From Trichoplax adhaerens (lineage: Eukaryota > Animalia > Placozoa), in the NCBI RefSeq assembly GCF_000150275.1, contig NW_002060953.1, forward strand, positions 779,693 to 843,692: a DNA stretch of 64,000 bases, written 5' to 3'. The translations under genes were made by a program, and so were the position numbers. Below the pieces are notes generated by a model, which was not told where the DNA came from, ran no database searches, and was given only the letters and a program-made list of their open reading frames with translations. Below, piece by piece: positions 17,891-63,954 of this stretch. Every line of letters begins with the position of its first letter. Position 1 is the stretch's first letter.

Positions 17891-18207
17891 TACGTTTTAC
17901 CTGGACTGGAATTCCTTGGACGGACAGACATTGGCCAACTTTGGCCGACAAATGGTGTCCAACACTTCATGATGACAGTACTTGAACTAAAGTATGCAGA
18001 TGGCCGATTCGTAATTGACTGATTTTTTCTAAATGAAGTGATATGACATTGTTATTCTATCGCCTGTTACTAAGTTCTGCTTGGAAGCAGTAGCTTCAGA
18101 TCATCAATATGACTCAAATGGATACGAATGATCTAGAAAACAGACACGGAAGATCCATACTGAAGAATGAATTCTTTTTCCATGTTTTCGGCCGCATTGA
18201 CTATCAA

Positions 18208-18707
18208 GAGTCCATCCATCCGAGTCCAACTCTACACTATTGCCAGTGGGATACCGTAGTTCCAGTAGTCCATCCGTCCATGGTACCGGACATAAGCTTT
18301 CTGTCGGCGTGGAACACCGACTACTGGACGTACAGTACAGTACTGTATAGTAAGCCAAATACAGTACAAGAGTCCATCCATCCGAGTCCAACTCGATACT
18401 ATTGCCAGTGGCCTACCGTAGTTCCAGTAGTCCGTCCGTCCATGGTACCGGACATAAGCTTTGTGTCGGTGTGGAACAACGACTACTGGACGTACAGTAC
18501 AGTACTGTACATTGTACAACACAGTATAGTAAGTCAGATAGAGTACATGAGTCCATCCATCCGAGCCCAACTCGATACTATTGCCAGTGGCCTACCGTAT
18601 TTCCAGCCGTCCACCCGTCCATTTCACCGGACATAAGCTTTCTGTCGGTGTGGAACACCGACTGCCGGACGTACAGTACAGTATAGTAAGTCAGATACAT
18701 TACAGTA
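18208..18707. repeat. Relatively GC-rich minisatellite, 162-179-bp unit, 3 copies, directly upstream of MED16
   Basis: gagtccatccatccgag(t/c)ccaactc...tattgccagtgg...accggacataagcttt.tgtcgg.gtggaaca.cgact..cggacgtacagtacagta starts at 18208, 18370 and 18549. Confidence 0.95.
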
Positions 18708-18814
18708 CTTCTGTAAAGTACAGGACACTAGACGTATTACAAGACCAACTCTCTCTGAGGAGGACACACAAAGAATTCCAGTGCAAGCGGCAAAAGCGTT
18801 TCTCCGATATAGCA

Positions 18815-29834: not shown

Positions 29835-32800
29835 CTACTCCATGTTGGCTTGTACTTCACGAATAGTCGCTGCTGGATCACTCGTTTCATCATCACCGGT
29901 AGCAACTTTCCTATTTTCATCTAAGGCAGCAGCCATAAGGCAGGCGAAGACCGTCATAACCATCTTGGGTTTGACCTCCACCAAATCTTCAGGCAAAGCG
30001 TAGACAGATGCGCCAATTTTCCTCGCCATAGAGATAGCATACTTAGCATTTAATAGTTTCGCTTCCTCTGTTATGCCCAGACAAACATTTTCGTAGTTGA
30101 TTGATTCCGGCTCAATGGATTCGACTAAGTCTATAACAGCTTTACTACTTGAAATTTCTGGGTCTTTAAAACTAGAAATTTTCGTCGATTTTTCAGTGCC
30201 TTCTAAAACGTTGTTAACCCATTCCACTATCTCCTTGTCACTGATAGGTTTTTCACTGTTGGCTAAGCTAGTAAGGATTGTTAGAGTATAGGCACGCATC
30301 ATTTGCCAAATCAGGGCTAAACGTATAACAAATGCATTCAAAAGTTAATCACACCTATCGAGTAAAACTAAATTTTATGATTAAGAAAACAATTATTCTA
30401 AGGTTTACAATAATGATACGAGCAAATACAAGTACCTAAAGTCAAAGTTCTTGTTCCATTATGGATATCTTCGCCACCAATGCCTACTAAACTAAATTTA
30501 AGTTGCAATCCAAGTTCCACAGCATAGTTACAGTTCTCAATTCGCTTCATTTTACCACCTAAAGCCTTAAAAGGTGGTTTGTTTACTCTAGACCAAGATA
30601 CTACGCCAGGCTTGATCTTATCAAAAAGCTACATTATAAGTGCCGTAAAACGTACAATAGATGAATTAGTATTGTTATTATGTAGTACCAAATTTTGAAA
30701 CTATATTTACCTGAAACAATTGCATTGCATCGTCCAAATCACTGAATAAATTGTTAACTGTGGGATCGACACCTAAACTATTCATCCAATTCCTAAAAGC
30801 TGAGAATAGTTGTACAATACATTCAGTCAATGAAGTCAACACAATGTATCGACTGCATGCTGTAAATACTTTTCTCCTCTCTGGTTTCAACGTAAACATC
30901 CAAATCTTCATCAACATCAACTGGCTCGAGAGCAGGAAATGTATTGAATAAGTTGGCTACAAACGCCATATTCAATCTAGCATGTCCAGTAGTAACGTCC
31001 TAAGTTGGTCATATGAGATTGCATATTTTAATATTTCCTTTATGAGTACAGCATATCAATTACATAGTAAACGAAATTTCTTGGCATACTTTCGCGCTAA
31101 CAAATTGACGACAACCAATTTTCTCAGCATCATTCAACATAAGCTCTGCACGCTCACGTAAATTTGACTCCTACACAGCAAAAAGTCAATGAAGCTGAAA
31201 TTGCTTGCAACATGGTAAATGCAATTCAAACCAAGATAATGTTGATATAATGCTTGCAAAAGATAGACACAAACACGAATATGTAATAGAAGGCTATCGT
31301 TAAAGAAAATCATTACCTTTAATGCATCGGTTGTAAGCATAAGCTTAGAAGGAGCAATTTGCTTCAGCAAGATGATGTAACACTCAGAGTCCTAAAATAA
31401 AAATAACGATTAATTATCAATAGGTTTTCTACTAGATCAACATAATTTAAAGCGTCTTACTTTAATGTCACCGCTAAAATTTTTAACACGTCTTGATACA
31501 CCAGCTGCTTCAAGGTGATGGTTGAACCAACGCAAGAGTAATTCCTCAGGTGATAGCTTCAACAAGTCTTGTACAGTTTCATTTTCAAGTAAAAGGCGAG
31601 GTAGTCCAGGACAATCTTTTAAAGTAATTTTAGCAAACAAACCAATCTATAATATAAGAATGCTATATTAGCTCATATTACTTTGTCCAATCCTTCGAGC
31701 GTTTATCAGTTGAGTAATGAACTAGATCCAATGATAAATGCAATGGAAATAGATCAATTACTTAATGGTTTAGGAATTAGGCAATGCTACGAACCCTAAT
31801 GATTTGCCACAAGAGGCCCATGACTAAATGCTCACGACCTGCAATGAGATCTTCTGCTCCAATATTGATGATGTTACAGCCGATGGCTCGTGCACTATTG
31901 ACAACCAACGTTTGGTTGGCGTGCTTACGATAAAGATTTAACTTCTTGAAATTGATGGCACGTTCATCAACGGTATCTTTAACAGATCGGTTGATCATTT
32001 TGCTATAAAAATTTTAAGATAAACAGCATAAATGCAACATACTTGAGAAATCTATAAAAGTATTAAGATCAAGGGAATGATTGAAGATAATTAAAATGAG
32101 ATCTGACGTTAAGTACGGTTAAACGACTATAACTTTGCAAAGTTTTGTATTGATTCTTACATTTCGCTAAAACATAGCAAGAAAAGAATTGGCAATTGAA
32201 AATTGTCTAGCAACACAGTAGGTTAACGAAAAAGCTACCCAACATTGATAAAGATTAAGTCATGCCCGATTAGGTAATAATAAAAAAGTGCAACTGTCAA
32301 TGGGGTATTTCTACATTGTCCCAATGGCTCAATTGATAAACTGCAAGGTTACGCTAAGACAAATTATATAAGATTTCTAAGACAGCAATCGTTTTCTTTC
32401 ATTCGAACTCATAGTGAATTTCCATGACTGTGCAGCATGACTACCGCGACGATGATGCGTGCCTCACTGATTATATCATCATAATATCTATTTCAAATAT
32501 CTAGTATAAGCCGTTATTGCGAGTTGGGAGTCAGGACTCCTATATACTTGTATTTACCATGATTTAATTAGTTGCGGTGCAAAATACAGTCGCTGCAACT
32601 CTGCCGGAAGTTGGTACATCAAGAATACTATGGTAAACTAGAATAATATCGTTCATAGAATCGTTCAATGTATGAGCGTAAAATAATCATTCGAATTTAA
32701 TCTCGACCAATGTCGCAGTCTGATCCAGATTGTTTACATCCAGCTATATAGAATATATTACACTGGCGTTAACAATTTCAGGCTATAGCAAGTCGAAAGA

Positions 32801-41025: not shown

Positions 41026-44000
41026 ATGATTCGTACTTCAGTATCATGGACTACTAAAATATTATATATAGTATTATTTCTGAGTTACACTATGCTATTT
41101 AGTGATGCTACTTTTACGAAACTGAACAACTGTCCAGCAACTTGCACTTGTCGCTCAACCGAAGTGCGATGCAATTCTCTTACCTCTTCTGTCCATTCTG
41201 TTTTAAAACCAGGATTGCAACAACTGTGAGTAACAACTGGTAATACCTTTTAGTTTTAACACTTTGTAGAATATGTTCGATGATGGAATGTGATAACGAT
41301 TAAAAATCTTAAAATGACATTACTGATGGCTAGTATAATTCACGTGCTCACAGTCTCTTATTGTCGATATTTCAATAAATCAAGTTTCAATAATCTTATA
41401 CTAGGCCTAAATTGTGGCTTGAAAAGACATGTGCCATCATTTTTTGTAACAGTTATGCACGTAAACAGGAATGATTTAGGCAGGAAAACTTGTATGATTT
41501 AAGTATCTTTACAATTACTAGAACTTTTACTTGTATCAATGTGCTCTATATCTCAAATTAATGTGAGAATGACAAAGATGTCCTGAGATCAGACTATCAC
41601 AATATTATCAGTTTTATATGAAGATCTGTTAGCAAATGTATTTACTCACCACGAAAGCTAAGAGTAACGGACATTGAAATTGCTTCAAAGTTTGGAGTGA
41701 TTAGCGGTTGTGCGAACATTGCATAATTAATCTTAATACGAGATATATAGAGGTACAAGGAAAAAAGTACCATACTAGACATAGGAGAGTGCAAACAAAT
41801 TTTATGTCATAAAAATCATTCCTACAAAAGAAATTGGCACTTTGAGGCAACTTGATTTGCATACTAATGTAACTAAATTACTAGTGAAATTAAATGAATT
41901 ACAAGCATGACTGATTTTAATATATTATAAAGTATAGAGCTCTAATGCTAGCCCTAGATTTAATCCAGACATTAAAACTAAAAATTTCTAGGACATATCA
42001 TACAGCTGTCTTGATAATCAAGTACATATATATATAGAATGAAATATATTTAAGCAGATTAGTTAGGTTTGAAACGTTGCCATAATTCATACTATCCGTG
42101 TAGAGTTTTCCATCAAGGTTTGAAGTGCGACAGTGATGGTGCACGTGAAATATTTGCCTTGGCCAATTTTCATGACGTTTCATTAATCGGCCACTGCAGT
42201 CAACCAGAACGCATGGCAGGTTTTAAATTGCGCGATGCAATGAATCTGCTAATCGAAGGTAAATTAATTAGGAATTGAAAGCTAGGTTTCATTAAAACTT
42301 AATGACTTGCAATGTCAAAGGTTATCTTTTTGATGCTATTTTATCTAAGAATTATCTGTATTTACTGTTAATAGCGTATATCATGATAGCATCACGCTAA
42401 TACTATACGGTATCAGCATGATACATAACCTTTCCTTTTAGACCGATAAATCGAAACTAACGAGTACGAAAATTATTTATTTTAGATCCTAGCTTGAAAT
42501 TTAAAGCTCTAACTAGAAAGCATTTATATCTAGAATTACGATTTATTAAGCTATCAGTGTAAATTAAAATCAATTAAATATTACGATTTACATTTTACTT
42601 CGCAGGTAAAGCCTTTAGTAGATATTTATAATGCATACACATACTAGATTATTATGTTATTCTGTTATAATACGTTGAGATTTCATAGTTTTGTAAATCT
42701 GAAAACAAATGTAGAATATAACTCCGTATTTTATTCTATATTGTACTGTAGACATAGCGTTAGCTACGATAGTATTAGCATTTATTTATGTGTAAAATAT
42801 GAGACAGATAATGCATATTTCGCAGGCAGCCGTCCGATGAAAAGAAGCATCCCATCCTTAGCAAGCACAGATCTGATTGATGGTATGTCTACGAAATATG
42901 ATTAATCGATTATTTATTTATATCATAAGTAACTTTCCGTAACGTCGTGAGAGAATTTTATTTCTTAATTATGTATTTATTATAAGCCTGATGTTACTGT
43001 TGTATACCAAGAAAGTGTCAAGGATACTTTTCAACAAACTGATTGAATGTTACTTTTTAGTTCCACCCGTCAGTTCAATATTTTGCACATTTGAAAAGGA
43101 TATGTGCAATTTTCAACAAGCGTATGGAACAGACTTTAGAGAATGGTATCGCACTAGAGCTGGCCGAAGCATTGGCCCAGGAGTTACAATCACTGATCAT
43201 ACAACTAAATCAAGTAAGCTAATCCTTAAACTATAGTGTAATTTAAATCTTGTACATGCTCTTATTGAAGAAATTAGATATTATAAGATTTAAAATATTC
43301 AATAAAGTCAGTTTAGTTTAAGGTGGGTAATTTAACAGTTATATAAATTCAATATCGATACCAAGGGGATATTTTCTATAGTAAGGTACTAGCATTAATT
43401 GATTGCTAATTTATAAAAATTATTATACTATAGTTCACGGCCATTATATGTTGTTCGATGCCATTGGTATCGTTCGCGAAGAAACGATACGGTATGCTGA
43501 TTTAATTAGTCCGCCTATGCTAGCCGTGGGTACTTTTAATTTTGTTGAGGTTAGGTCAATAAAAATTAGCGACATTACAAGGCTAAATATCGCATTCCAT
43601 TTTCAACTATTTCAAGATGATTGATTAAACAATAATTTTCAGGTCACAATGTCCCTTCTTGCCTATGGTACGCCAGCTGGTAAAATTGAAGTCTATGTAC
43701 TTTACCCTAAGATGACTGCTACACGATATTTGGTAAATTCGATAAGACCAGCATCGAGTAACAACTGGGGAAATTCAAGATTTCGATTTAGAGCAAAATA
43801 TTCTTATTATCGTGTAAGTGATCAATATGAGATTAAGCATTGTGAGGTTTAAAGCAGAGAAATATGTTAACAAGTGAAATGATATCCCCTTGAAATGTTT
43901 AATAGAATAATGGATTTCATACTTAGTGTACTACTACTTAGAATAGATATTTTGCACAATTGCTATTACTTTTTTTGTATTGATAGGAGACTCTAACTAA

Positions 44001-47000
44001 CCATGCTATCGAAGTTTATAGTTATCAAACTATTCATTATTTATTAACAGATAATGATTCGTGGATATTGTGGCAAGACTTCAAATAATGAAATCCTAAT
44101 CGATGATATTGATATAAGATCACCTAGTAAGTTGCCATATATATCGTGCAGCAAGAATTGATTGATTGCTTCAATGATTTCTGTATCAACCGCGTGCTAG
44201 CATAATATTGGCCAATTGATGCTTAAGTAATGATACACTGTAGAATTTTATGACTGATAATTAATCCTACAAGCCTCAAGTTTTGGTAATTTTACTATGG
44301 CACTAGGTGCAAACTGTAGAATAGGCAATGGCCAGTACTACCGCGGACCTCGCTATTTCTCAGAAAATGGTACACGTTGTCAACCTTGGTCACTTAATGG
44401 CTCATATAATCCTACAGGGTATCGCTACTCGGATTTAATATCGAACTATTGCCGTAATCCTGTTGGAGCTCGATCTAGACCGTGGTGTTATGGGAATACT
44501 GCGCGATACCAGTATGTAATAAAACCCTTCAAACTGCACAGTATCCATTTGGAGGTAAGACATATCTAAGTTATTATTGTTAAACTGAAAGTTATAATAT
44601 TATTGAGTAACTCAAAGAGTATCTATTTATTTTTATTGCTTTTAAGTTTTTGACTCTATGTGCGATATGAATATCAGGTTATTAGCGCTAAGTTTAAGTT
44701 TAATATAATGTATAAAGTAACGATAACTCAAAGAGAACCTACTTATTTTTATTGTATTTAAATTTTAAACTTTATATACTATAATATTAATATATTGATG
44801 TCACTCACAGGAGTAATACCACTGTCTACTCTCTTCTAATGTGAGTGATCAACTAACTTATCAGCTACTTAGTCACTCCAACTAACTATGGAGAGATACT
44901 GTAAGTAAGACTAACAACTTCCTCACAAGTATAATAAGCGGCTTGTTGTAAGATTAGCGTTATGAGTTTTACTTCTATTCATACAACGAAAGTATAGTAC
45001 CTTGTCGTACACTAGAGAAGTATCAACTGAGCGATATATTTTCTGCTTGAGCTTATATACAGTCGCCACATGTAGGTGGTGCAAAGTAGAGAAACACATA
45101 TAATACAATTTACTCACTTAGTATGAGAAACACGATGACTAGTATCGTAACACTTGGTTATTATTGCTAAATTTAAGCTTAATATTAGTGATAGAGCAGT
45201 TCAAAGAGAGCTCATTAATTTTTATTGTATGGAAATTACAAACTCTGTNNNNNNNNNNNNNNNNNNNNNNNNNNNNNNNNNNNNNNNNNNNNNNNNNNCA
45301 ACTCTGTTAGAGTCTAGATTAAGATTTAGTTATTCATTTCACATATCATTTGTATTCATCGTTATGCTATTCTAGCAAAGTATCCACTAAAAGTCATAAG
45401 TACTGGAGGAAGTCCTTACGGTGGTCGTCTGGCTATTTACTATAATGGCACTTGGGGTACGGTTTGCAGGCAAGGGTTATCATCGATTACTATTAAAGCA
45501 ATGTGTAAACAATTAGGTCTAGGATCTACTGGTTATCTATCTACGGGTAAAAAACATTGCTACGATATCAATAAGATTCTATGAATTAATTAATTAAGAT
45601 AGAAATCGCATTTTTCCAAGAATAAAAAGTACGATAAGCTATACTAAGCTACTTCAACTTGATTTATAATAATTATAAATTTTATGTAAAAGCCAAGATA
45701 CTCCCTTATGCTGACACACGAATTTGGATTTCTGGCAATAATATCACCTGCCCAGCGATTGGGACATCTCTAGAGCCATGTAGCTTAGATAATTGGGGTG
45801 AGATCGGCTCTTGCACACATGCTGATGATGCTTTTATAAATTGTTTCAAGAATCCTTCATTTCAGCCACCGCTATCAGGTTAGCGATGCTTAAAAAGTTC
45901 TAATAGTAAATAAAATGAAATTAATGCTACTTCGGAATTTTTCAAGTATATTATTCTGATATAGACTTATTCCTATATCGTTAATTTAGCAATAGGGGTA
46001 CTGATTGCACCATTTGTCCGGGAAATAAGAAAATATGACGTTCTATCTGCCAATACTCTATCGATTAGGAATGGACTGAACTCCACTAGTGGATATCTGA
46101 ATATGAATATAAATGGTACAAACGGAACAATTTGTTCCATAAATTGGAACATGAACAGTGCAAATGTTGCTTGTCGGCAATTAGGCTATCTAGGAGCTAT
46201 CACTTCTAATGGTAAAGAAGGCGACATTGTATAAATTTACACCAGTTCTGTTTTGTGCTGTGTATTTAATTAAATCCTACAAAAGAGTTAGAAACTATTG
46301 CTGATAATCATTGAAATTAATAGCTAGAATTAAAATCAACTACGAAATGATTTATACGATATTATTTATTTGAATCTAGCTTCACATAATGTTCCTTCGG
46401 ATATTCGAACATGGATAAACTACATCGATTGCTCAGGTTTTGAAAGCAATCTTCGAGAATGTCGAATTCGCTATTCAAGTCGAAGTACTCCTTGTCCTAG
46501 TGCCAATGTCTCATCTCTTACTTGTATTCCGAAGCCATCAAAATATGGTACCTTAACTGCCGTTAGCTTTTATCAATTTCTAAATTTTTTTTTCATCTTT
46601 ATTTATTTCCCATTTTGGTAAATATTACGCACCGAGCAGATTATCGTTCCGGCCATGAGCCAGATAGATGCTTTTTTAGCTATGGCTTATGTGGTTGGGA
46701 GAATGCTGGTAAAAGAATGTGGATTTGGGATGGGAGAAGTCGTTTTTTCCATAGTCCAGTCTATCCACGTAAGATTATTAATATGATATTTTTGCAATTA
46801 CGATCATGCATTAATTGCCAAATAATTTTTATGATATGATATATCATAGCTATCAGTGAAGCCTATGCATACGTATACATAAGCCAGTATGATACAACAC
46901 CTTCGAAAGCAGTATTAAGAAGTCCTCTACTACGCAGTATAGCTAATGTCCGACAAGCTGAAAGAAAATGACAACTTAATGTATTATAGTAATTCTGTTA

Positions 47001-47739
47001 CGTTTTTAATCTCTAATAATAGTTCAGGCCTTAATATATGCCATGATATTGTACGTATATTAGATGAGGATCCGCTACTACCTCGCAACCGATCATATTA
47101 CAGGCTTTTATGCACAATATAGAAGTATGAATACACAGCGTACGAGCTTTATTGACAACTTCCCCATAAGTTTCAGTATACAAGAAAACTGGGACGGTTA
47201 TACCACAACTTTGTTCAATGCTAATGGCACTTTTAAGGTGCAAAATCAATTATTCAAGAGTCCATTTATTTAGAAAATTTTACTAGTTAATAAATAGGCT
47301 GTTTAAAAGTCATCAATTTCAATTTTACAGTTTTATTTAAATGTATTATCATTATAGATAGAATTAGTCGTTGATTTCCAGATGGAGAATACTCCAGCAT
47401 TGACAAGAAATTTAATCGCGGTGGAAAGTTTGATAGTTGCTGGCGTAACCTATGGTATGAATCTAATTATAATCATCATACAGGCGTGTTGTTAACTGAC
47501 GTGATTATAGCCAACGATAACTATCATTTTAGGTGGATGGTAGTACTATAGTATTAGCTTACAGTCTATAAGATAATTTACAATTACTAATCTTATTCCC
47601 TTCGATTAATATTCTAGATCATCCATTGTCAGGCGGTGCTATTGCTGGTATCGTAGTGGGTTCAATTGTTGTCGTTATCTTAATTGTTATTGTAGCTAAA
47701 TACTTTGCAAATGGAGGTATTAAAAAGCAAGGAAAATAA
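41026..47739 (+). CDS. Mosaic type-I membrane protein: SP-LRRNT-LRRCT(reduced)-MAM-kringle-[gap]-SRCR-SRCR-MAM-TM
   Basis: Exons encode CPATCTCRSTEVRC; LKCDSD...HCSQPERMAGFKL; MAM (FCTFEKDMCNF...DHTT...GHYM...LISP...ILIDDIDI); kringle (CRIGNGQYYRG...CQPW...NYCRNP...PWCY); SRCR1 (GRLAIYYNGTWGTVC...MCKQLG...CTHADDAFINC); SRCR2 (NGTICSINWNMNSANVACRQLGY...IDCSGFESNLREC); MAM2 (CFFSYGLCGWEN); TM (LSGGAIAGIVVGSIVVVILIVIVA). The end of the kringle and the exact 3' end are uncertain; an extra exon could extend to ~47890. Confidence 0.85.
45249..45298. other. Assembly gap (50 N) inside the mosaic receptor gene
   Basis: Run of N; both flanks carry aactctgt. Confidence 0.99.
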
Positions 47740-50076: not shown

Positions 50077-53000
50077 CTATTTCTGTAACGCAGCTGTTTG
50101 AAGGCTCGCAAAGATAGTTAACACCATCTTGGGCTTGATTTCAATTAAGTCTGCAGGTAAAGCAAACACGGCTGCTCCGATTCTTCTTGCCATAGTGACA
50201 GCATACTGAGCATTTAATTGTTTCTCCATTTCTGTTTGGCCCGAATTCACAATATTGTAGTCAACTGAGCCTGGTACAATAGCATCGACTAAGTCGATAA
50301 CAGCTAGACTAGTTGAGATTGACGGGTCTTTAAAGCTCGAAATTGCTGATGTTTTTCTTGCTTTTTTCAATTTGCTGTTGACCCAGTCAATAATTTCCGA
50401 ATCGGAAATAGGCTTATCACTATGGACTAATTTTGCAAGTAAAGCAAGTGTATATTCCCGCATCATTTGCCAAACTAGTGCTAAAGATGCAGTAAAGTAA
50501 TTTGAGAAAGTTACTCAGCTTTGCCAAATATTTTAATTATACTTTTTTAAATTACAGTATAAATATTTAAAACTATGCGAATAGAATAACTGCAACAAAC
50601 ATTCATCAGATAGATATACACCTGTGACCAGTGTCTTTGTTCCGTTGAAGATATCTTCACCACCGATACCAACTAAAGAAAATTTAAGATTTTTTCCAAT
50701 TTCTACAGCGTAGTTACAATTCTCGATTTTCTTCATTTTGCCACCCATTTGCTTAAAAGGTGGACGGTTTACTTTATCCCAATTCACCACACCAGGCTTT
50801 ATTTTGTCGTATAGCTACATCAATTAAGAAGAACATAAAATGAGAGAGAGATTGATTGCTGTCGTTATTGCTCATATGTGGTCGCATAACAGTATATTTG
50901 AAATTTATATTTACCTGAAACAGTACCATTCCGTCCCTTATATCATAGTACAAATTGTTAATGAAGGGATTTACGCCTAAGCTATTCATCCAATTTCTAA
51001 AAGCTGAGAGTGTTATATATTTAGTCAAGGAAATCGAAAATATGATCTTGTGTATAAATAGAAATACTTTTTTCCTCTCTTGATTCATCATACGCCTCAA
51101 TTTCTTCATTGCTTTTTGGCACCAGAGCAGGATAATTATTGAATAAGTTGGCAACGAAGGCCAGATTTAGTTTTTGATTTCCCGCAACGACATCCTAAGT
51201 TAAGCATACATCATAGCATGTTTAAATATTTCGTTAATGAAGATATCGTGTTTATGGTGGTATAAAATTTGACACACCTTTGCTCCAATAAAGTGACGGC
51301 AACCAATTTTCTCAGCCTCAAATAATAGACACTCTGCGCGCTTAGTAAGATCCTTGGCCTATAGAATAGCAATAGGTAATTTTAATCTGAAACTTTCCGC
51401 GAAATGTTAAATTTATTCCAAGTAAGAATGATATTGTGACTAGTAAAAAGGAAGCCACGGGGATTATTACTGCAGAAAGTTACCTTCATTATATCTGATG
51501 ATGGGCAGCATTTGGAAGGAACAAGCTGATGCAATAAGACGCTATAGGCTTCTGAGTCCTATGATAAAATATCGATCAGTTATCTATTGGATTGTCGACA
51601 TAAGATAGCCTGACTTGAAAATAATTTACCTTAATATCACCGCTGAAATTATTAATACGCCTATTTGAACCAGCAGCTTTAAGGTGGTGATTAAACCAAC
51701 GCATAAGGATTTCTTCTGGTGATAACTTTAATATATCATTTAGAGTTTCGCCTTCGTGTATAACAGCAGCTATTGCAGGACAATTATTAATATTAGTTTT
51801 AGCGAAAAGACCAATCTATAAAATAGAAACAGTCATATTAGTTCATATTATGGTATATAATAGTTCTTTGATTAAGACTATTTCCTCAACTTATTGTAGT
51901 ATACCACAAGTAAAACTAGATGCCACATTAGTAATAATAATCAAGTGTATAAATCATTTAATCAAGGAATATAAATATAATATTATTAACCCTGATAATT
52001 TGCCATAAAAGACCCAAAATTAAATGCTGGCGGCCTTGCATGATATCTTGTGGTCCAATGTTAACTACAGTACAACCGATAGCTCGTGCACTATTGATAA
52101 CCAGCGTTTGATTTTCTTGCATAGTAAAAGCAGTCAATTTAGTTGTGTTAATTGCACGCTCATCCACGGTTTTGCTAGCAGATAGGTTGATTAACTTACT
52201 GCAATAATTTAATAGAAAAAACAAATCACGGTTTAATGATTGATATCCATATTGGATTTATTGGGATATTTTACAGACAATAATTGCTATTTTTTGTATA
52301 GATTAGTTAAGCTATCGTAACTTGACTAATAATTAAACAACAATCAGTTGTTTAATTACAGTATCCTAATAGTCCAAATAGAGCTGATTAAAGATACGTT
52401 TATGATTGAATCAAGAAAATTTATCGTATTCATTGACGTTTACTCGTAATGGTAATTATTCATAGCGAATTCCTTACACGTGTAAGTGTAAACATAAGCG
52501 ATATTGGAATGTTGGGCTATTGTTACTAGTAAAGAACTTACTGAAGATATTGCCCGTTCTACAATAGTATTTGATCGGTATTAACGTCCAAAATGGGACT
52601 CTACTACGCTATGAACATCGAATATATTGCAGTAAATTGGTATAGGAGGTGTTCCTCAATTTAAAATGGAACCAAATTGAGGTATAAGGATAAAATAGTC
52701 CAAAAGGACGAGAAGATTAACCAAGTTAGCTATCATTGGCTATTAATGCAAGCTATATCTATATTTCTTAACTGCATGAATGGATTATACGATACTAATT
52801 ACAGTTTTACACTTACCATAAGATGATGCCATCTTTGCAGCGTTCAAATAATTCATTTTTTCCAAGGGTATTATCAATTGGTAAATATTTAGCCAAGCTA
52901 CCATCATTTTTTAAAGACGTGTTAATCCAATTAGTAAAGCTTCGATATTCTGCGTCGGAAGAAGAATGTTTCGTACCCTGGTCATTCGCTTCAGTGGTAC

Positions 53001-55587
53001 TGCTGGCTACTTGTATGTTGTCAACCTTTTGAATTACAGCTTTGAATCCATGGGCTGTAGCCTGTCCTGTAGTTGATGCAAATATCTAAGAAAAAAATGC
53101 GTCAAAGCAGTAATACTTCAGCAATATAACATTTTGCGGAAAATTTACTCTTTAATTTTACTATTAAATGTTACATCGCAAAATGATACACACACGTATT
53201 GCACCAGATTATAGTCACTTCTAATGTTAGGCAATAATCAGTTACTAATCTTCTATTAGTTAAATAGCTTTTTCAATGTTGACAGTATTTTTCGTGCTTA
53301 TTGAATTGCATACTTATATGCGAAACTAATTTATCTTATATGTTACTGTCAAAGTCTAATATATATATACCAATAGTAAGACATTTTATTGGTCAGTTGC
53401 ATAGTAATCATCATACTAATAATCAAAATCTGAATAGAATAGTAATCAAATCAGGCTTTTATCCTTGCTTCTAGCATAATATTAATGAACCACTAGAATT
53501 TAAAAATAAGATTATGCTATGGATAAACGTAATTACAGTATAGACGTTGCGATTTTATTATACTGTATATATGAGTTCGGTTTTAATTATGTGGAATAAA
53601 TGAGCTTAAATGCACATTTTGGATAACTATATAATGGTTAGAGGATTAATTGCAATGAATAAGAAGTAAAAAATTTTTCGACTATACCAGATATGATTGA
53701 AATACTAAGAGTAAATATTTCTAATTACTAATCTGGACCTTGTTGACTAAGATACGCCTGTGAAAACAGCTACGATATTAATTTTGAATATCGTTGATTT
53801 CTGATTAAAATACGATTTTTGAGTTTAAGCACCTATGTGAGAATGTGAAACATTAATAGAAAAATAATAGCGCTTGAGTAGATCGATGACGCACTTTTCC
53901 TCTTTAGTTTTTATGTAGAGGAATTGTTTAGGTTGATAACTGAATTATAATTATGAGAATCTACCCGTAATATCGTAATAAAGTAGGCAGTTAAGAACTG
54001 TAAGCAGGTGTTTACACCATTCGAGTTATGAATACTGTACTTTAAATATTACAATAGAAACTCGTCAGCAATAATTGTATAACTTCCATTCAAAATTTAT
54101 CTTTGATTCTAGATTATTAGTAAAACATATAACTTATATACGACTAAGATAGAGTATCTCGGTCAGATTTATTTTGTTCATGAAATTACATCAATTATGA
54201 TACTATCGCTAGTGGAAATTGTAGTTTAATTACTGGACTATGTCTTTACTGGTATAAATCAACAAATGCCTTCGACCAGTCAACCTAAGTTGCTTCATTT
54301 ATTGTTTGGTTAAGGTGCTTTAAGCAATGTTTTAGTTACATAGCTTATGGTTTAGTTTCTGTATTAATGATAATATTTTAAACCATTTCCGAATTCAGGA
54401 TCTCACATCTGTTGTAATTTCTCAGAAATTGAGAAGAGAACTCACTGATTCTATTTAACAGATATCTAATGGATAAATTTCGAATGGATAGTTACATTAT
54501 AGTTTTTATGGTAATCATAGTGCTGTTGATAGCAATACAAGATGGTGATTGATAACAAGCTAAGCGGGACTGAGTTTTTTGTACCTGATCTGTGAGAACT
54601 GGTGCGTCAAATGCTTCAATAAAACAAATTAATAATTGATTGGAAAGAAGTATTTTCATATTTCAATATTCAGGAGAATAATCTTGTAAAATATAGTAAG
54701 CTAATGTTTTTACTATTAATCTGGGTTTTATTCAAATTACAATAATGTAACAAAAATGATTAAGTAAAGTAGGTTACATGTATTGTAAATGAAAATGATA
54801 TAGTAAACGCTATCTAGGGCAAGGGATTTAGATTATATAATATAATGATTTAAATTTTATTTAATTTGTTTATCGACAAAATTATAATTTATGTCGTAGG
54901 AAGAGCAGTCTTATCCGTAATAAGACTGAAAGTAAGTAATGATATTAACAGTGTAATAACTTACAAGTAAATTAAAATCAAATTTTATCATAATCACGGG
55001 ATTAATATTGCTAAGTAGAATATCGACTTTAATCTTACTTGAAGAAATTCGTTGAATTCAACAGTTCCATTTTTATCCCTGTCGACTTCGTTGATTATTT
55101 GACGCAATTTGAAGCCCGGTATGTCTTCACCTAGTGCTTTCATAACGTTGCCTATTTCTGCACTGGTGATGTGACCATTTTTGTCTATATCGAACTGAAG
55201 TATTAACAAAATTATAAATTAATAAATTAGCTAAAAGATATTAACAACATCTTTTTAAGTTATTTTTTACAGCGATATACTAATCGATAAAAAAATCAGT
55301 TATTATGGCCATCTTATCATACCAGAATACTACAGTTACAGAACGCATTATCACGAAAAAGGTGCTAAATAATATCGGCATCAAATCAATGAAGGAAAAA
55401 TAAGAAATTGATTCGAGTTACAGCAGTATCGTAACTTGCTGTAAGTTCAATTTTTCACTGGATATGGTGAAGAAACGACGAATTCGGCGTTAACTTTAGG
55501 CATAGTGCTATGAATAGGTTTTACCTTATTAAATGAGTTTCGGATTTGCTTAACTATACTTTCGGGGAGTTCAGGAGCTGCAGCCAT
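50077..55587 (-). CDS. PLS: Plastin/fimbrin paralog 2; 11 exons at positions equivalent to paralog 1
   Basis: [21 protein letters not shown]|FDIDKNGHI...[14 protein letters not shown], then [18 protein letters not shown]...[38 protein letters not shown], and [36 protein letters not shown]. Confidence 0.96.
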
Positions 55588-55639
55588 CTTGAGAGTGTAT
55601 TGCAGGTACAGCGTAACAGCACTACAATCAAATTTCAGT

Positions 55640-55868
55640 TGGGAAATGGTGTCGAGTTGGGTTGGTCGCAAAGTTTATATAGCCTGTTTGCATTGACCAA
55701 CTGTACAAAGGCCCAATCCTTCATTCTGCCACAGCATTGTTTTGTAATTTGCAATGGGAAATGGTGTCGAGTTGGGTTGGTCGCAAAGTTTATATAGCCT
55801 GTTTGCATTGACCAACTGTACAAAGGCCCAATCCTTCATTCTGCCACAACATTTTTTTGTAATTTGCA
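55640..55868. repeat. Near-perfect tandem duplication (2 x 114 bp, period 115) of the plastin-2 core promoter
   Basis: 55640-55753 and 55755-55868 differ at 2 positions. Each copy contains a minus-strand TATATAAA and a CCAAT. Confidence 0.95.
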
Positions 55869-57505
55869 GTTGGTTAACATTCTAAGAAACTACGCCAAGA
55901 GCGCCACAGTAACAATTAAGAAATATAACAATGGGTTATATATCATTACAAATAGAACATAATAACCTTGATCGTAATCGCATATAATACTGTATATTAT
56001 TTCTGCTCATCTAATTTGAATTTTATGATATTATTGAATACATAAGGAAAGGGGCAGTAATAGCGTGTACTAGTACTAAATTTCAACATCAAATTTTTCC
56101 ATAGGAGTGTATGGTGTTGATGCGTATGTAATTAGACATCATTATTTAATAATAATTTGTTCTGCATTATCTTCAGGATAATTTGATGATCATGATAATA
56201 CATTAACTATAATGTCTCGTATATTATCCATATTATAATTTTACTTTTTATTAAGGAAATATGCGTTGTATTAAAGTAATATCGCTACAGTATGGTCGTT
56301 GTCCTATAAGTAAGATATCGTTTATTGAATTTTGCACAATGCTTGTTGTTTAGTAGCAGACGTCCAACACGAATTATATATTATAACACGTTATCGGCAT
56401 TGTGAATTACATTTCATTCTTCAATTCTATTTGTGGTCTTTTCTATTATTGGGGAAATGGTAATTTAATGTGCAAGACAATAGAACTGTGTAGATGAATG
56501 TCTCGACACAAGTACGTGTATAAGCACTGTTTTTCCGGCATTAAAATTTCTCAGTAATTAGGCTAAAAATTTATCGTGCCTTACTTTACGTATAACAGGA
56601 AAACCAAAATCATAGATCAACAAAACCACATTCAAGTTTGCTTCATACAGAAAATGCTACAAATATCATTAATTTCATTAAAAGTTATAATCTCTATTTT
56701 GTTAATTTTTCTTTTTATTAAAAACAACCCATCTTCCTTGGATACGGTCAGAGAATAGAAGCAGCCTTCTCATTGGCCGAAATATGACCAGTCTTCCTAT
56801 GCTAGAACTGTAAAAAACACAATATGAATATTACTTTATCTCGTATTGTGGTTGCAATTAGTCATTCTAATGAAATAATTTCGAGATTTGTAACGGAAAT
56901 TTCCAGTGTTGTTCTGGATTAAGTGTAAATGAGGTAAAGAAATAATTATAATCTTTGATATTTTTTATATTTATCCCTTACTGTATGTTAACGCTAAGGT
57001 GTATAAAAAATAGTAATCAATTGATTATTGTCTTCCCTATTTTTGCTTCGTACTTTGTTTCTATATTCAGTCTTCTCAATGCTAGTAAAGAGTAATAATT
57101 TTATTGTAGGGAAATAGGTTCTATAATGAGTTCCAATAATTCTACGTAAGATGGCTGCGCTAAAACTAAGTGGACTGGTGGTGTCAGGATTTATATTTAA
57201 GGGCAAAGATAGTTGTGTGCGATTAAGAAGGATATAAAAGGCTGACACCTTCAGGAGGGACTTGAGTTGATAGCCTGATAAGTAGGGGTGGGGTGCATAT
57301 TTTTAAAATGCCCAGAGCTGTAAGTTGCTAGAATTTTTCAATCAGTTTAAAATTAAAATGAATTGAAAGTGCATACAATGATTCTTAAAAATCATCCAAC
57401 AGAAGTATAAAGCATTGAGGTACCCTTTATGTAGTGGTAACAATAGAGAGTCTCTTGATGGGCAATTGGGCCTTAAGCTGTGGCAGATAGAACGCTTAAC
57501 CTATC

Positions 57506-57650
57506 TTGAAGTTCAAATATGTCATATCGTATTCAGGGATAGCACGAGACTTGGGAAGTTTATCTTACCTTCAGAATACTAGTCTTATATTGAAGTTCAA
57601 ATATGCTATATCATATAGAGGGATAGCACGAGATTTAGGAGGTTTGCTTT
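57506..57650. repeat. Direct repeat, ~84-bp period, 2 copies
   Basis: ttgaagttcaaatatg..atatc.tat..agggatagcacgaga.tt.gga.gttt at about 57506 and 57590. Confidence 0.8.
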
Positions 57651-58046
57651 GCCCTATCGGCGTAGTGACGTAAAATCAGGAAATTTTCAGACGGCGGGTA
57701 ACCGTCAATCATGAACAGAATTGAAAGGGCGATTAAGTGTTGACGTAAAAACAGTGATTATTCCTTACTCAGTTGTTCACTATTGCCTTTGAAAAGTATT
57801 AAATGGACCTATGGCAAATGCAATCATTGTGCTAATGATCAAAATTTTAGTAATCGCTAACGTCTTCAAGAAATGGAAAATATTTGGCTAAAATAGTCCT
57901 TTCCAAGATGAAATGTATATATCATGCATAGCTTTGGGCAGTATTTACGATTTATTTACTATTGGGTCATGTTTACCCGAGCTTGCAACGCCATGTCATA
58001 TAGAATTTGACCATCAGAAGGTAATGAAAAGTTGTATGGTATAAGC

Positions 58047-60400: not shown

Positions 60401-63400
60401 ATGGTTAAGTTGACCGTAATGGCTGTTCATTACGGTTATTTGATCATGGTAATTTTGCTACCAGTTATATCACAAGTTATTACAGCGTCTGCCATGAAAG
60501 AGGACAATCGCTTAATCTATCAAAATCGATGCCCTAAAGATTGCACTTGCGACAATTATCATGTCCGCTGTAATTCTATTTTGGATTTTTCATTATCTTC
60601 ATTACCTGCAGATGCAAAGATCGTGTAAGTCTTTGAGGCTGGTAAAATTTTTTGTCAGTGATATTTTCTTCACATCTAAATCTTCAGTTATTAAGCGTAT
60701 CAAAATAAGACGTTTATAAAAGTGTATAATGATAAAACTGTGAATTATAAAATGGTATCCCTTTAATGATACGCTTGTGTAAAGATTAGTTAGATAATAT
60801 TAAATTTTACCGTTGTTCCAATACAAACTCATGGAAAGTAGGTTAGTTTTCGTAAGATATTAAAATTATTTAGTCGTGATAGCAATATCACGGTAATTAC
60901 TTTCGATTTGGGTTAGTTTTAAGCGAGTATATACCCAATACTTATACATTGCAGGTGCCGATAAAAGTATTATGAATTCTCATTTTTATTAATCTACTGT
61001 TTGGAAGATTAATTTTAAGAAGCTCTAATATTTTCCGAAGTTCAATAGAAAAGAAAAATTATGACAGTTAATAATTTATGCGTCAAGCTACAACAAGGGA
61101 ACAACACTGTTACCGAAATTTATATTCTTTACGATAATAGGTCATGACAACAATCTTCATGGAAACGTATTCTGACTCCGACTTGCACGAATTTTTAGCT
61201 ATTTTCTAAATGATAATGTTCTGGCGAGATACAATTGCCCCATTATTTTGGTAATTTAGTCAGTTGAAAAACAATTTTTCTCAGTTTCCATTTACTTTGA
61301 ACTGAGGTTAATTGATAAAAATTGCATTAGGGCTATACTATTTCACTTCTCAAGGAAAGTAGCCCGGAAAAATATTTCATTATCTCCTTTAGAACGCCGG
61401 TATTAATTATTGCAAAAATTATAATTTAAGTTTGCGTTGATTCGCATACTCGTTAGCCAGTTATCCGTTCAAATTTTATTTTTGATAATATAATCATCAG
61501 GCGATAAAATATACCATATTATAGATATTAACTTTTACCAATTAAAGTTGCACTGAGAGTATCCATGTTCAATTGCGAGAATGTTACCATAGTTTGACAC
61601 TTAATCAGTAATGTAATATAACCATATTCATTAAAGAGTAATCATTAACGGTGCATTTATTTTACTTGACACCGCTCTCATTACACATTAAATGAATGCG
61701 AATGAACGATGTTGTGCAAAACAACTTTTCCTAGCATACAGTTACAAAAGACCGGAAATTCATTTCGAAGTTCATAGCCTACTGACATTTGATTAAGAAT
61801 GGCTTTCTAGATTTAATTCAATAAATTGCAATCCTCGAGCGCTATTTATGTTAATAGGGGATAGATGTAAAAATTGCTGAATAATTTGCCTGGATTACCT
61901 ACGCTTTGAATCAATATATAGACTTTCAGAAGTGACAACTGCTTACTGAAGGCTTTCATTGATAGATTACGAGCATTTTATTACCTTTAAAAAGGGAATA
62001 TCAGCTAAGATATTTGTACATAAAAAATTCCAATACGATAAGGCAATAGGTTACACTCTTCTTCTTTACTATATTTAAGTCTTTGAGAAGAAAAACATAA
62101 TAATTCTTTTATAACCTTTGCTTATATAGGATTTTCAAAGAAAATTTTCCTTGCGATGCCGATGTTCTAAAATTAATGATGTTATTGAGACTTGCAAAGG
62201 CAAGACCCCTTCGAATTGTAAGTAAATGCAGTCAACGGCAAAATTCACAGGGGTTGGCATTAATTGATCTCAAGCAATTGGACTTTTATCCAAAGTCTCC
62301 ATTTGAATCTCGAGGTAAGAAAATATTTATTATTCTAACAGTCCTAAACATAGAGTATAAGTATTTAATTATTCTAATGGTCCTAAACATAAAGCATGAA
62401 ATACGTACCAAAGATTGCAATAGTAAATATGGTATAGGTACATGAAATCTATTTTTACATACTACATATTTTATGGATATATACAGTGTGTATGATTAAG
62501 ATATAATAGTAGTATTGGTAATAATTCAGTACCAGTATTCAACCCCTAAGCATTTCAGTATTTTACAACATTAGACAGTTTTCTTCATAGACTAAATCTC
62601 GTACCGATGGCTTTCTGTTAGAAAGACTAAAACATAATATACATTCGACTTTTATTCATATTATGATTCTGGATTTATTCACGTTAGCACTCTTTAAGAA
62701 CTATTCACGATGTGCTACATCTTTTAGCATCAATAAAAGATTGAGCGTATTTACTAGTTGGGCACGAGATTATTTGCTTCTACGTACATAAACTACTCTG
62801 TATTAGCGATCGCCAGTGCATGTAAGATAATACGACGGTTATTGCAGATATGCTGTACCTTAAAATTTTTTATCCCGATTTGGCTTTGACTGTACTGTTA
62901 TGCAACAATATCAGACCTAAACGATAAAAATCGAATGTTTTCTAACTGTGTAGTAATGGAAGCTTGGTTAAAAATGGTAAGGTAAATATGAGTTGATGAA
63001 GTTTACTATTCCTTAGGGGTGTTATCTAGAATAAGCTTTTTTACATGCTAGAAAAAATCAATTATTCTACTGCTGGTGAAGCTTCTTTTTAAAAATGCAT
63101 TAACTGTGCTATTCAATACCAGATTTTAAGTAAGCTTTGCATTGCCTTATATGCAGTTACTTATTTGCTTTATCATGAAGGTTTGCGTTTACGACGTGCT
63201 ACTCCTAAAAATCTCTTCATGCAAGCTATAATTCTCGGTACCTGTTTTAGTGGAGGACTTGCACTTGTAATTCTAATTTGTTGGCGTAATCGAATGAAGA
63301 GAAAACTTCTGGATCGAAGTGAGGAAAATTCGACTATTAATAATACAAATGGCGAGAATAATTTGCAAGTATTTCCTTCAACTCCTATAGCGTGCGTCTA

Positions 63401-63954
63401 TAGTGATACTTCTGATCGGACTCAGATTGGTAGGTAGTATTAAAAAGTTGCATCACTCTTTTAGATTTTGCTATTTTATATAGTACGCAAGCATACATTC
63501 GAATGCAAGCTTAAGGAGAGCACTAATTATTGTTATTTAGCTATTGATCCAATTTAACCATTGATAGGTAATTCTAATGCAGCTACATCCACTGACCCAC
63601 TTGCACAACCAGAAGGTAATGCGTCGAGATAGCTTATTGAAATTAATTAATTTACCAATGGAATATGCTTCTCATTGTTATCATCTCCCCTATTCGCTTG
63701 TGTAGCTCCTCCGCTATATCATGGTAAGTGTATAAGCTTAATATGAAAAAAACAATAGTGCTTTTGGTAAATTGCCTACCTTCCTCTACTTCGCAATTCT
63801 AAAATTGGCGGTATGGGTTAAAATAATTTGATTGGTGCAAATTATAATTACAGAGTTTAGGAATTATGAGTCTACTAGCTTTAATCCTGAAATTTCGAAA
63901 ACAGCTTATAAAGAGTCAGGTGAAAAATATTCGAAATTATTGACATGTGTATAA
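60401..63954 (+). CDS. Small type-I membrane protein (~282 aa): SP-LRRNT-LRRCT(reduced)-RLRR-TM-cytoplasmic tail with PPxY and PDZ-type C-terminus; 6 exons
   Basis: Exons 60401-60624, 62130-62314, 63157-63429, 63568-63615, 63706-63723 and 63854-63954 are all GT-AG and total 849 nt, open to TAA. Motifs: CPKDCTCDNYHVRC; FPCDAD...KCSQRQNSQGLALIDL; TM AIILGTCFSGGLALVILICW; APPLYH; KYSKLLTCV*. Confidence 0.8.

What the first reader, a model, noticed from the sequence alone, without database searches (positions are those of the whole stretch)
41026..42882. Apparently LRR-less LRRNT-LRRCT mini-domain shared by two paralogous receptors (copy A; copy B at 60401-62314)
Seen: in both genes exon 1 is a signal peptide plus LRRNT (CPxxCxCx6C) ending at a phase-2 donor. 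The next phase-compatible exon is an LRRCT-like cap: A = L|VFHQGLKCDSD...HCSQPERMAGFKLRD, B = V|IFKENFPCDAD...KCSQRQNSQGLALIDL. I found no phase-2/2 LRR exon in either intervening intron. Both copies keep only two cap cysteines. Established: LRRCT caps have four cysteines paired C1-C3 and C2-C4. Inference: both paralogs lost the C2-C4 pair and kept C1-C3, which is structurally coherent and suggests a real compact fold made of the two caps alone (~90-100 aa), possibly a new extracellular domain family.
Basis: partly seen in the sequence, partly recalled or inferred. Interest (0 to 1): 0.8.

Follow-up and report, generated by a model that had tools for sequence, protein, structure and literature searches.

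The report
Repeat-less LRR cap mini-domain in Trichoplax
Two neighbouring Trichoplax surface-protein genes, and at least eleven more in the genome, begin with a small domain made only of the two end-caps of a leucine-rich-repeat domain with no repeat between them. It is a real and unusually minimal variant of a well-known fold, not a new fold.

Summary
The genome is Trichoplax adhaerens, not human.

**Exon structure.** In both genes exon 1 (signal peptide plus a 4-Cys CPxxCxCx6C N-cap) ends at a phase-2 GT donor. The next phase-compatible exon is a 2-Cys C-cap-like exon.

**Family.** The same two-exon layout, with the same intron phase and position, occurs in at least 13 loci. One of them (TRIADDRAFT_51903) still has all four LRRCT cysteines. 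It shows that the two cysteines kept in A and B are C1 and C3.

**No hidden repeat.** The introns hold no LRR motif, no LRR-like phase-2/2 exon and no ORF conserved between paralogs. Public gene models of T. adhaerens and Trichoplax sp. H2 join the caps directly.

**Fold.** AlphaFold2 predicts a confident module of about 85 aa: hairpin, one strand, helix, strand, helix. Its best PDB neighbours are capped ends of LRR proteins (NgR, LGI1, TLR3, GPIX, GPIb-beta). The scores are modest.

**Limits.** Pfam scores are below threshold, no transcript was examined, and gene B has no public model. An exhaustive profile search found relatives only in placozoan sequences.

**Verdict.** This is a new minimal variant of the capped LRR domain, one repeat shorter than GPIb-beta/GPIX. 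It sits on receptors of the SRCR class that a published survey lists as putative scavenger receptors. The scan met a sibling gene earlier on other DNA (s1-759544).

The parts
41026..41225 (+). Gene A exon 1: signal peptide plus 4-Cys LRRNT-type N-cap, phase-2 donor
   Evidence: Pfam LRRNT E 0.029. The family alignment A3 has four invariant Cys.
41226..42103 (+). Gene A intron 1 (878 nt), no LRR exon
   Evidence: There is no LRR motif. Four phase-2/2 AG..GT open segments exist and none is LRR-like. No ORF is conserved with paralog introns. Pfam on all 10 ORFs of 22 aa or more gives only LRR_2 at E 0.13. One-nucleotide indels against Trichoplax sp. H2 at 41484 and 41815 break the two longest ORFs.
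42104..42258 (+). Gene A exon 2: LxL strand plus 2-Cys LRRCT-type C-cap (C1 and C3 kept)
   Evidence: Leave-one-out HMM score is 35 bits. Pfam LRRCT E 0.17. The H2 ortholog model has pLDDT 69-89 over residues 12-95.
42826..42882 (+). Gene A exon 3: linker with the dibasic site RPMKR|S (42831-42845)
   Evidence: The exon is phase-compatible. KR|S falls 26-27 residues after C3, in register with RX(K/R)R in the paralogs.
43061..47739 (+). Gene A body: MAM, kringle (cut by the N gap at 45249-45298), two SRCR, MAM-like domain, TM helix, short tail
   Evidence: Exon ORFs. Pfam on the H2 ortholog P0006. AF2 helix at residues 821-847.
60401..60624 (+). Gene B exon 1: signal peptide plus 4-Cys N-cap, phase-2 donor
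   Evidence: It is 44% identical to A over the N-cap.
60625..62129 (+). Gene B intron 1 (1505 nt), no LRR exon
   Evidence: Pfam finds nothing on the 10 longest of its 20 ORFs of 22 aa or more; the other ten were not scanned with Pfam.
62130..62314 (+). Gene B exon 2: NFPCD... 2-Cys C-cap-like exon, the most divergent family member
   Evidence: Leave-one-out HMM score is only 14 bits. No public gene model was found.
63157..63437 (+). Gene B last exon: RLRR (63186-63197), TM helix (about 63225-63284), cytoplasmic tail, stop
   Evidence: The acceptor is phase-1 compatible. ORF listed.

Best explanation
Both genes open with a self-contained 'cap-to-cap' leucine-rich-repeat mini-domain of about 80-85 residues.

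How it is made: exon 1 encodes the signal peptide and a normal 4-Cys N-terminal cap, up to its 'IPxGxK' tail. A conserved phase-2 intron follows. Exon 2 starts with the single 'LxL..' strand that normally leads an LRRCT, and continues with the C-cap helix and the 'CxxPxxxxGxxL' turn. Ordinary splicing joins them, so the C-cap's own leading strand takes the place of the first repeat and no 24-residue LRR exists.

How it is held together (inferred): the two N-cap disulfides plus one C-cap disulfide (C1-C3). The C2-C4 pair was lost in all family members but one.

Where it occurs: the module heads a tandemly expanded, apparently placozoan-restricted family of type I membrane proteins. Most are MAM/kringle/SRCR proteins of the scavenger-receptor class. 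Gene B is a small module-TM-tail protein.

What it does (inferred, about 30% sure): a module with only three strands has no concave LRR binding face. It therefore most likely acts as a compact N-terminal interaction or pro-piece. A proprotein convertase probably separates it from the receptor body at the conserved RX(K/R)R site 20-42 residues after C3.
For: Gene structure:
- Splice sites and phases are identical in nine genes with both exons resolved: A, B and seven paralogs. Two further loci, L003 and L013, need a manual reading of their junctions.
- At least 13 loci carry the exon-2 profile.
- The 4-Cys member L018/TRIADDRAFT_51903 aligns its C1 and C3 with the two invariant cysteines.
- The introns lack LRR motifs: 1 hit against 1.8 expected. 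They also lack LRR-like phase-2/2 exons (none at all in L010 and L018) and conserved ORFs.
- As a control, Pfam LRR_8 finds 84 LRR exons elsewhere in this genome and none at the family loci.

Public models:
- In an exhaustive HMM search of 1.84 billion representatives, the 16 true hits among 20 are T. adhaerens or Trichoplax sp. H2 gene models, or unnamed metagenome fragments taken to be placozoan from their family exons and about 30% G+C.
- In all eight models that include the N-cap, the C-cap starts at residue 46-70, directly after the N-cap. These include RDD40320.1, the H2 ortholog of gene A (99% DNA identity).

Fold:
- AF2 gives pLDDT 76-88 for P0001 residues 28-110 and 69-89 for P0006 residues 12-95, with the same topology in both.
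- Foldseek hits are all capped LRR proteins, including the NgR LRRCT (51 columns, rmsd 2.0, probability 0.99).
- In an unbiased VIA search the top 9 hits are LRR proteins: TLR3 Z 5.6, GPIX Z 4.3, GPIb-beta Z 4.0.
- phmmer against the PDB gives 16 hits, all of them LRR caps. N-cap hits map to residues 25-59 and C-cap hits to 64-102.
- The ESM Atlas's own model agrees.

Dibasic site: register shown.
Against: - No transcript or split read was examined.
- The H2 models come from MAKER with transcript evidence (PMC6057997), but this particular junction is not shown to be read-supported.
- Pfam LRRNT and LRRCT scores are below the gathering thresholds.
- The exon-2 profile finds no canonical LRRCT in the PDB or in the big library.
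- Structural Z scores of 4-5.6 are in the range the tool calls 'middling', and unrelated alpha/beta folds follow at Z 3.7-3.9.
- Both structures are predictions from an alignment of 17-18 sequences.
- Gene B has no public model, scores 14 bits, and could not be folded.
- The cleavage and the function are inference only.
Confidence: 0.78

Rival explanations
1. Missed repeats. The real mRNAs contain one or more small LRR exons from intron 1, or use other splice sites, so the domain is an ordinary short LRR domain and the 'LRR-less' look is a gene-model artefact.
For: - LRR exons can be as short as 72 nt and are easy to miss.
- Intron A holds an ORF reading ...LRQLDLHTNV... (41785-41907) and an ORF with a weak Pfam LRR_2 match (E 0.13).
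- No transcript was seen.
Against: - Neither ORF can be spliced in phase 2/2.
- Both are broken by 1-nt indels in Trichoplax sp. H2.
- No intron ORF is conserved among nine paralogs.
- L010 and L018 have no open phase-2/2 AG..GT segment at all.
- All eight public models that include the N-cap join the caps directly.
- The joined module folds confidently.
Confidence: 0.05
2. Not LRR caps. The two exons encode an unrelated small cysteine-containing domain that resembles LRRNT and LRRCT only by short motifs.
For: - Pfam scores are below threshold.
- The exon-2 profile finds no canonical LRRCT.
- Z scores do not exceed 5.6.
Against: - Every sequence hit of P0001 in the PDB is an LRR cap in the right order and place.
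- All Foldseek rows are LRR proteins, and nine of the top ten VIA rows are.
- One member keeps the full four-cysteine CDC...C...C pattern.
- The Atlas's independent model matches chondroadherin-like, LRRC17 and LGI1 ends.
Confidence: 0.07
3. Germline-VLR-like arrangement. The cap-only gene is an unassembled template into which LRR cassettes are copied somatically, as happens in lamprey variable lymphocyte receptor genes.
For: The gene-level layout (signal peptide and N-cap, a non-coding spacer, then the C-cap) recalls germline VLR genes. This is my own knowledge. VLR caps are also the best sequence hits of the N-cap.
Against: - The spacer has canonical, phase-matched GT-AG sites in all paralogs.
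- No LRR_8 match lies in the window or in the two gene clusters. Only two sub-threshold minus-strand rows lie 21-28 kb from L002.
- The spliced product folds on its own.
- Thirteen diverged copies keep the layout, which fits a functional spliced product.
Confidence: 0.01
4. Gene B is a decaying or unexpressed duplicate, so only gene A and the other paralogs make the module.
For: - No model of B appears among the hits of a profile that included B itself.
- Its C-cap scores only 14 bits in the leave-one-out test.
- It lacks the CxxP motif.
Against: - There are three open, phase-compatible exons with a signal peptide, four N-cap cysteines, both C-cap cysteines, RLRR, a clean TM helix and a stop.
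- The flanking CH-domain gene is duplicated with it.
Confidence: 0.2

Closest known systems
Platelet GPIb-beta and GPIX ectodomains (the smallest capped LRR domains known to me)
   Same: - N-cap with four cysteines and a C-cap.
- Small type I membrane protein (as in gene B).
- Whole-chain structural alignment to the model: 3rez_D Z 4.5 with 77 aligned residues; 8wfs_c Z 4.3 with 74-79 aligned; 3rfe_A Z 4.0.
   Different: - They keep one full LRR between the caps and a four-cysteine C-cap. About 100 chain residues align to about 84 model residues.
- The Trichoplax module has none, and in A and B it has only the C1-C3 pair.
- There is no significant sequence similarity, and no evidence of a GPIb-like complex.
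Canonical LRRNT/LRRCT-flanked LRR domains (Nogo receptor, LGI1, Slit, TLR3/7/8, lamprey VLR)
   Same: - The N-cap sequence is closest to VLR LRRNT (E 0.009).
- The C-cap is closest to LGI1 LRRCT.
- The C-cap superposes on the NgR LRRCT over 51 columns at rmsd 2.0.
   Different: - Those domains have from about 3 to more than 20 repeats, which form the concave binding sheet. Here there are zero repeats, so that surface does not exist.
- Pfam thresholds are not reached.
Placozoan SRCR/MAM/kringle transmembrane 'scavenger receptor' repertoire (Kamm et al. 2019, PMC6321704)
   Same: Gene A's H2 ortholog RDD40320.1 and its paralogs are SRCR-containing TM proteins of the class that paper counts (45 SRCR proteins).
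   Different: The paper's text does not mention an LRR cap module. Gene B has no SRCR domain at all.
Germline (unassembled) lamprey VLR genes
   Same: Gene layout: signal peptide and N-cap, a non-coding spacer, then the C-cap.
   Different: Here the spacer is an ordinary phase-2 intron and the spliced product is a complete fold. No LRR cassette lies at the family loci.

Membership tests
LRRNT (PF01462 / SMART LRRNT) | Four cysteines in the pattern C-x3-C-x-C-x6-C, followed by the 'L..iP..ip' tail | tested here: met
   The four cysteines are invariant in all nine exon-1 sequences. The tail 'IPxGxK' is present in most of them. A and B read CPxxCxCx6C.
LRRNT (PF01462 / SMART LRRNT) | Score at or above the Pfam gathering threshold (25.8 bits) | tested here: not met
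   A scores 14.4 bits (E 0.029). Four of nine members match, with a best E of 0.00095. B has no match.
LRRCT (PF01463 / SMART LRRCT) | Four cysteines paired C1-C3 and C2-C4 (pairing known from the NgR and GPIb-alpha structures; my own knowledge) | tested here: not met
   A, B and 10 other loci have only C1 and C3. Only L018/P0001 has CDC...C...C. The pairing itself cannot be tested here.
LRRCT (PF01463 / SMART LRRCT) | Score at or above the Pfam gathering threshold (20 bits) | tested here: not met
   A scores 12.9 bits (E 0.17). No other member matches. The genome-wide PF01463 search found nothing.
LRRCT (PF01463 / SMART LRRCT) | Cap fold: leading strand, helix, then the 'CxxP..G..L' turn packing on the last strand | tested here: met
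   In the predicted models only. The NgR LRRCT aligns over 51 columns at rmsd 2.0 with probability 0.99. Capped C-terminal ends give Z 4-5.6.
Leucine-rich repeat domain proper (LRR_1/LRR_8 clan) | At least one, normally two or more, 20-29-residue LxxLxLxxN repeats | tested here: not met
   There is no repeat in the exons, the introns or the public models. About 17-18 residues, the normal N-cap tail, separate the N-cap's fourth cysteine from the C-cap strand.
GPIb-IX-type small LRR subunits | One LRR between the caps, and assembly with a partner chain through the ectodomain and TM helix | tested here: not met
   The repeat is absent (above). Assembly is not testable with these tools. The resemblance is of form only.

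The most novel reading that the evidence does not exclude
The cap-only module is a convertase-released disulfide-locked piece of about 9 kDa. It would be a placozoan-specific secreted ligand or pro-domain family encoded at the head of its own receptor. Gene B would then be a minimal membrane-tethered precursor of the same piece. This would be a way of using LRR caps that has not been described in any other animal.
Probability: 0.25. Interest if true: 0.6.

Novelty: new variant of a known kind. Interest (0 to 1): 0.45.

Why it matters
- **Structure.** It would be the shortest natural member of the capped extracellular LRR class. It would show that an LRRNT and an LRRCT can close on each other with no repeat between them, and with one of the two C-cap disulfides gone. 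That bears on how the caps fold and evolved, and on the design of minimal LRR scaffolds.
- **Placozoan biology.** It labels the so far unannotated N-terminus of a tandemly expanded receptor family. Together with the conserved dibasic site, it gives a concrete processing hypothesis that can be tested.
- **What it is not.** It is not a new fold or a new kind of system.

Tried and rejected
- **Intron scans.** I searched the introns of nine paralogs for LRR motifs, phase-2/2 exons and conserved ORFs and found nothing.
- **Pfam on intron ORFs.** I scanned all 10 ORFs of 22 aa or more in A's intron and the 10 longest of the 20 in B's intron. The only result was a chance-level LRR_2 hit.
- **The ORF 41785-41907 ('LRQLDLHTNV').** I considered it as a relic LRR and rejected it. 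It has no phase-compatible splice sites, its N-x-hydrophobic spacing is wrong, and it is frame-broken in H2.
- **Exon-2 profile against PDB sequences.** It gave only a chance hit to RFC1.
- **Genome-wide PF01463 search.** No hit; the model is too short for six-frame use.
- **Repeat-protein hits.** The four hits P0015 and P0018-P0020 of the big search are spurious. Two are bacterial LRR proteins and two are other tandem repeats, each matching half of the profile many times.
- **Metagenome contigs.** L019-L021 are too short to reach an upstream N-cap exon.
- **Literature.** I found no paper on an LRR-less cap module or on this module in Trichoplax.
- **H1 versus H2 comparison.** At 99% identity it is too close for an exon/intron rate contrast.
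- Exons were searched one at a time by reference. The joined form was studied only through database proteins that already carry it (P0006, P0001). B's joined module was therefore never folded.
Full report
**What the window is.** It is AT-rich eukaryotic DNA from a 105.6 Mb assembly of 1414 contigs. Proteins identical or nearly identical to those encoded by paralogous loci carry the names TRIADDRAFT_... (Trichoplax adhaerens), and their counterparts come from Trichoplax sp. H2. It is not human.

**The observation.**
- Gene A starts at 41026. Exon 1 (41026-41225) encodes a hydrophobic signal peptide and C-P-x-x-C-x-C-x6-C with the usual tail, and ends at a phase-2 donor.
- Exon 2 of A (42104-42258) completes the split codon as Leu and reads VFHQGLKCDSD...GHCSQPERMAGFKLRD.
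- Exon 3 of A (42826-42882) carries RPMKR|S. After it come MAM, kringle, two SRCR domains, a MAM-like domain and a TM helix.
- Gene B has exon 1 at 60401-60624, exon 2 at 62130-62314, and a last exon that I add at 63157-63437 with RLRR, a TM helix and a tail. It is a protein of about 229 aa.

**It is a family, not a coincidence.**
- Searching the genome with exon 2 of A found three paralogs. A profile of five sequences then found 15 places.
- Thirteen loci were aligned. The two cysteines are invariant.
- In nine genes where both exons are resolved by the splice enumeration, the intron sits at the same place and in phase 2, just before a hydrophobic 'I-V-F'-type strand. L003 fits the same junction on manual reading.
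- The loci lie in tandem clusters (C1414 5.73-5.83 Mb, C1397 0.97-1.02 Mb), with two on C1399 and A plus B here.
- In leave-one-out HMM scoring A is clearly a member (35 bits). B is only weakly one (14 bits).
- B's membership is helped by three other facts. Its N-cap is 44% identical to A's. It has the same intron. And a CH-domain (plastin-like) gene on the minus strand lies 10-11 kb before both A and B, with 59% identity between the two copies. Together these point to one tandem segmental duplication. That is an inference.

**The cysteine argument.** One member, L018 (TRIADDRAFT_51903, B3RL74), reads ...PCDCKYLFPLLW...GYCSTPSRF...LLC. That is the full four-cysteine LRRCT pattern. Its first and third cysteines fall in the two invariant columns. 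Its second and fourth have no counterpart in A, B or the other ten loci. Established knowledge (the NgR and GPIb-alpha structures) has LRRCT pairing as C1-C3 and C2-C4.

**Are repeats hidden in the introns?**
- Across nine introns (616-1505 nt) a strict LxxLxLxxNxL motif occurs once, against 1.8 expected in shuffles.
- I enumerated every open AG..GT segment that could be spliced in phase 2/2. There are four in A, eight in B and none in L010 or L018. None looks like an LRR.
- No intron ORF is conserved between paralogs (all below 20 bits), while the flanking exons score 25-100 bits.
- Pfam on all 10 ORFs of 22 aa or more in A's intron, and on the 10 longest of the 20 in B's, gives one chance-level LRR_2 match.
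- The two longest A-intron ORFs are each hit by a 1-nt indel in Trichoplax sp. H2.
- As a positive control, LRR_8 finds 84 LRR exons in the six-frame genome. None is in the window or in the two gene clusters. Only two sub-threshold minus-strand rows lie 21-28 kb from L002 on C1399.

**Public models.**
- An HMM of exon 2 was scored against 1.84 billion representative proteins and gave 20 hits.
- Four are repeat artefacts. The other 16 are Trichoplax gene models, or short ORFs called on three short, AT-rich metagenome contigs that carry the family's C-cap and MAM exons. I read those contigs as placozoan DNA.
- In all eight models that include the N-cap, the C-cap begins at residue 46-70, immediately after it.
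- RDD40320.1 of Trichoplax sp. H2 is the ortholog of gene A (99% DNA identity) and reads ...GLQQ-L-VFHQG....
- The H2 annotation used MAKER with transcript evidence (PMC6057997). That makes the junction plausible, but it is not proven read by read.
- Gene B has no model among the hits.

**Fold.**
- With the family as the alignment, AlphaFold2 gives pLDDT 76-88 for residues 28-110 of P0001. The order of elements is hairpin, strand 58-65, helix 69-81, strand 85-90, helix 101-110.
- For the gene A ortholog P0006 it gives pLDDT 69-89 for residues 12-95, with the same order of elements.
- Every Foldseek PDB row is a capped LRR protein. The LGI1 LRR domain has E 2.5e-3. The NgR LRRCT aligns over 51 columns at rmsd 2.0 with probability 0.99. 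GPIX and GPIb-beta align over their whole chains.
- A Foldseek-independent search of 48,161 chains puts nine LRR proteins on top: TLR3 end Z 5.6, Slitrk1 Z 4.9, GPIX Z 4.3, GPIb-beta Z 4.0. Unrelated small alpha/beta domains follow at Z 3.7-3.9. The structural signal alone is therefore modest.
- Sequence adds to it. All 16 phmmer hits of P0001 in the PDB are LRR caps.
- The ESM Atlas's own model of P0006 residues 11-95 matches chondroadherin-like, LRRC17 and LGI1-like models at TM 0.57-0.67.

**What it is.** It is an LRRNT fused directly to an LRRCT. The C-cap's own leading strand ('LVFHQGLKC', 'IVIFKENFPC') sits where the first repeat would be. It is about one repeat shorter than GPIb-beta and GPIX: about 100 chain residues align to about 84 model residues. 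Those two are the smallest capped LRR domains I know of. Pfam's thresholds for both caps are not met, and the definition of an LRR domain (repeats present) is not met. I therefore file it as a new minimal variant that works like the two caps, not as a plain member.

**How it may work.**
- Three strands cannot form the concave LRR binding face, so a classical LRR ligand site is unlikely.
- Nearly all members have R-x-(K/R)-R or a related dibasic site 20-33 residues after C3. B has RLRR at +39 to +42, and A has RPMKR at +23 to +27 if exon 3 starts at 42826.
- In the MAM-first subgroup a conserved S-x-F-x-x-P-S-[IV]-Y-N-F-x-G follows the site. The four-cysteine member lacks the site.
- From this I infer, without proof, that a convertase separates the module from the body, as a pro-piece or as a released or tethered partner.

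I made no joined spliced sequence of A or B for any search or fold, and I searched for no junction-spanning DNA pattern. The joined form was examined only through database proteins.

**Earlier scan notes.** s1-777478 (the convertase site) is consistent. s1-759544 describes a sibling gene of the same family on another contig and calls the family already listed as putative scavenger receptors. I agree about the host proteins. The cap-only anatomy is the new point.

Noticed in passing
window 29835-30341 (-) and 50077-50466 (-): These are two CH-domain exons of plastin/fimbrin-like genes (EF-hand plus CH in the H2 annotation), 59% identical. Each lies 10-11 kb before gene A and gene B respectively. 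The unit 'plastin-like gene plus cap-module gene' looks tandemly duplicated.
   Followed up: partly
window 41060: Trichoplax sp. H2 has one extra T here, inside the signal-peptide codons of gene A. Its public model (RDD40320.1) therefore starts at a downstream Met and lacks the signal peptide. This is either an assembly error or a real difference.
   Followed up: partly
window 42486-42560 and 42753-42825: The H2 model of gene A inserts two extra coding pieces between the C-cap and the dibasic site. They are absent from all paralogs and fall in a stretch with pLDDT below 50 (P0006 residues 97-166). Splicing 42258 directly to 42826 puts KR|S in register with the family, so the public model is probably wrong here.
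   Followed up: partly
window 42831-42845 and 63186-63197; L004, L002, L010, L011 and the metagenome fragments: A conserved RX(K/R)R-type site follows the module. In the MAM-first subgroup it is followed by S-x-F-x-x-P-S-[IV]-Y-N-F-x-G. The four-cysteine member L018 lacks the site.
   Followed up: partly
window 45249-45298: A 50-N assembly gap lies inside gene A and cuts the C-terminal part of the kringle (Pfam positions 1-61 of 79 in the H2 model).
   Followed up: no
window 55514-55960 and 57382-57670: Direct repeats between the second plastin-like gene and gene B. The ORFs repeat the same peptide of about 38 aa (…VELGWSQSLYSLFALTNCTKAQSFILPQH…) and a unit of about 29 aa.
   Followed up: no
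window 8440-11688 (-): A single 1082-aa ORF, low-complexity and Ser/Asn-rich, ending in an F-box (Pfam F-box-like, E 9e-10).
   Followed up: no
window 17600-19000: A patch with raised G+C (0.39-0.41) and overlapping ORFs on both strands that carry repeated 'YSTV/VVPVV' peptides. It is probably a repeat or a mobile-element remnant.
   Followed up: no
L019, L020, L021 (ENA ERZ27263980, ERZ23499115): Short metagenome contigs (about 30% G+C) carry diverged C-cap, dibasic-site and MAM exons of this family. I infer that placozoan DNA of other lineages is present in environmental assemblies.
   Followed up: partly
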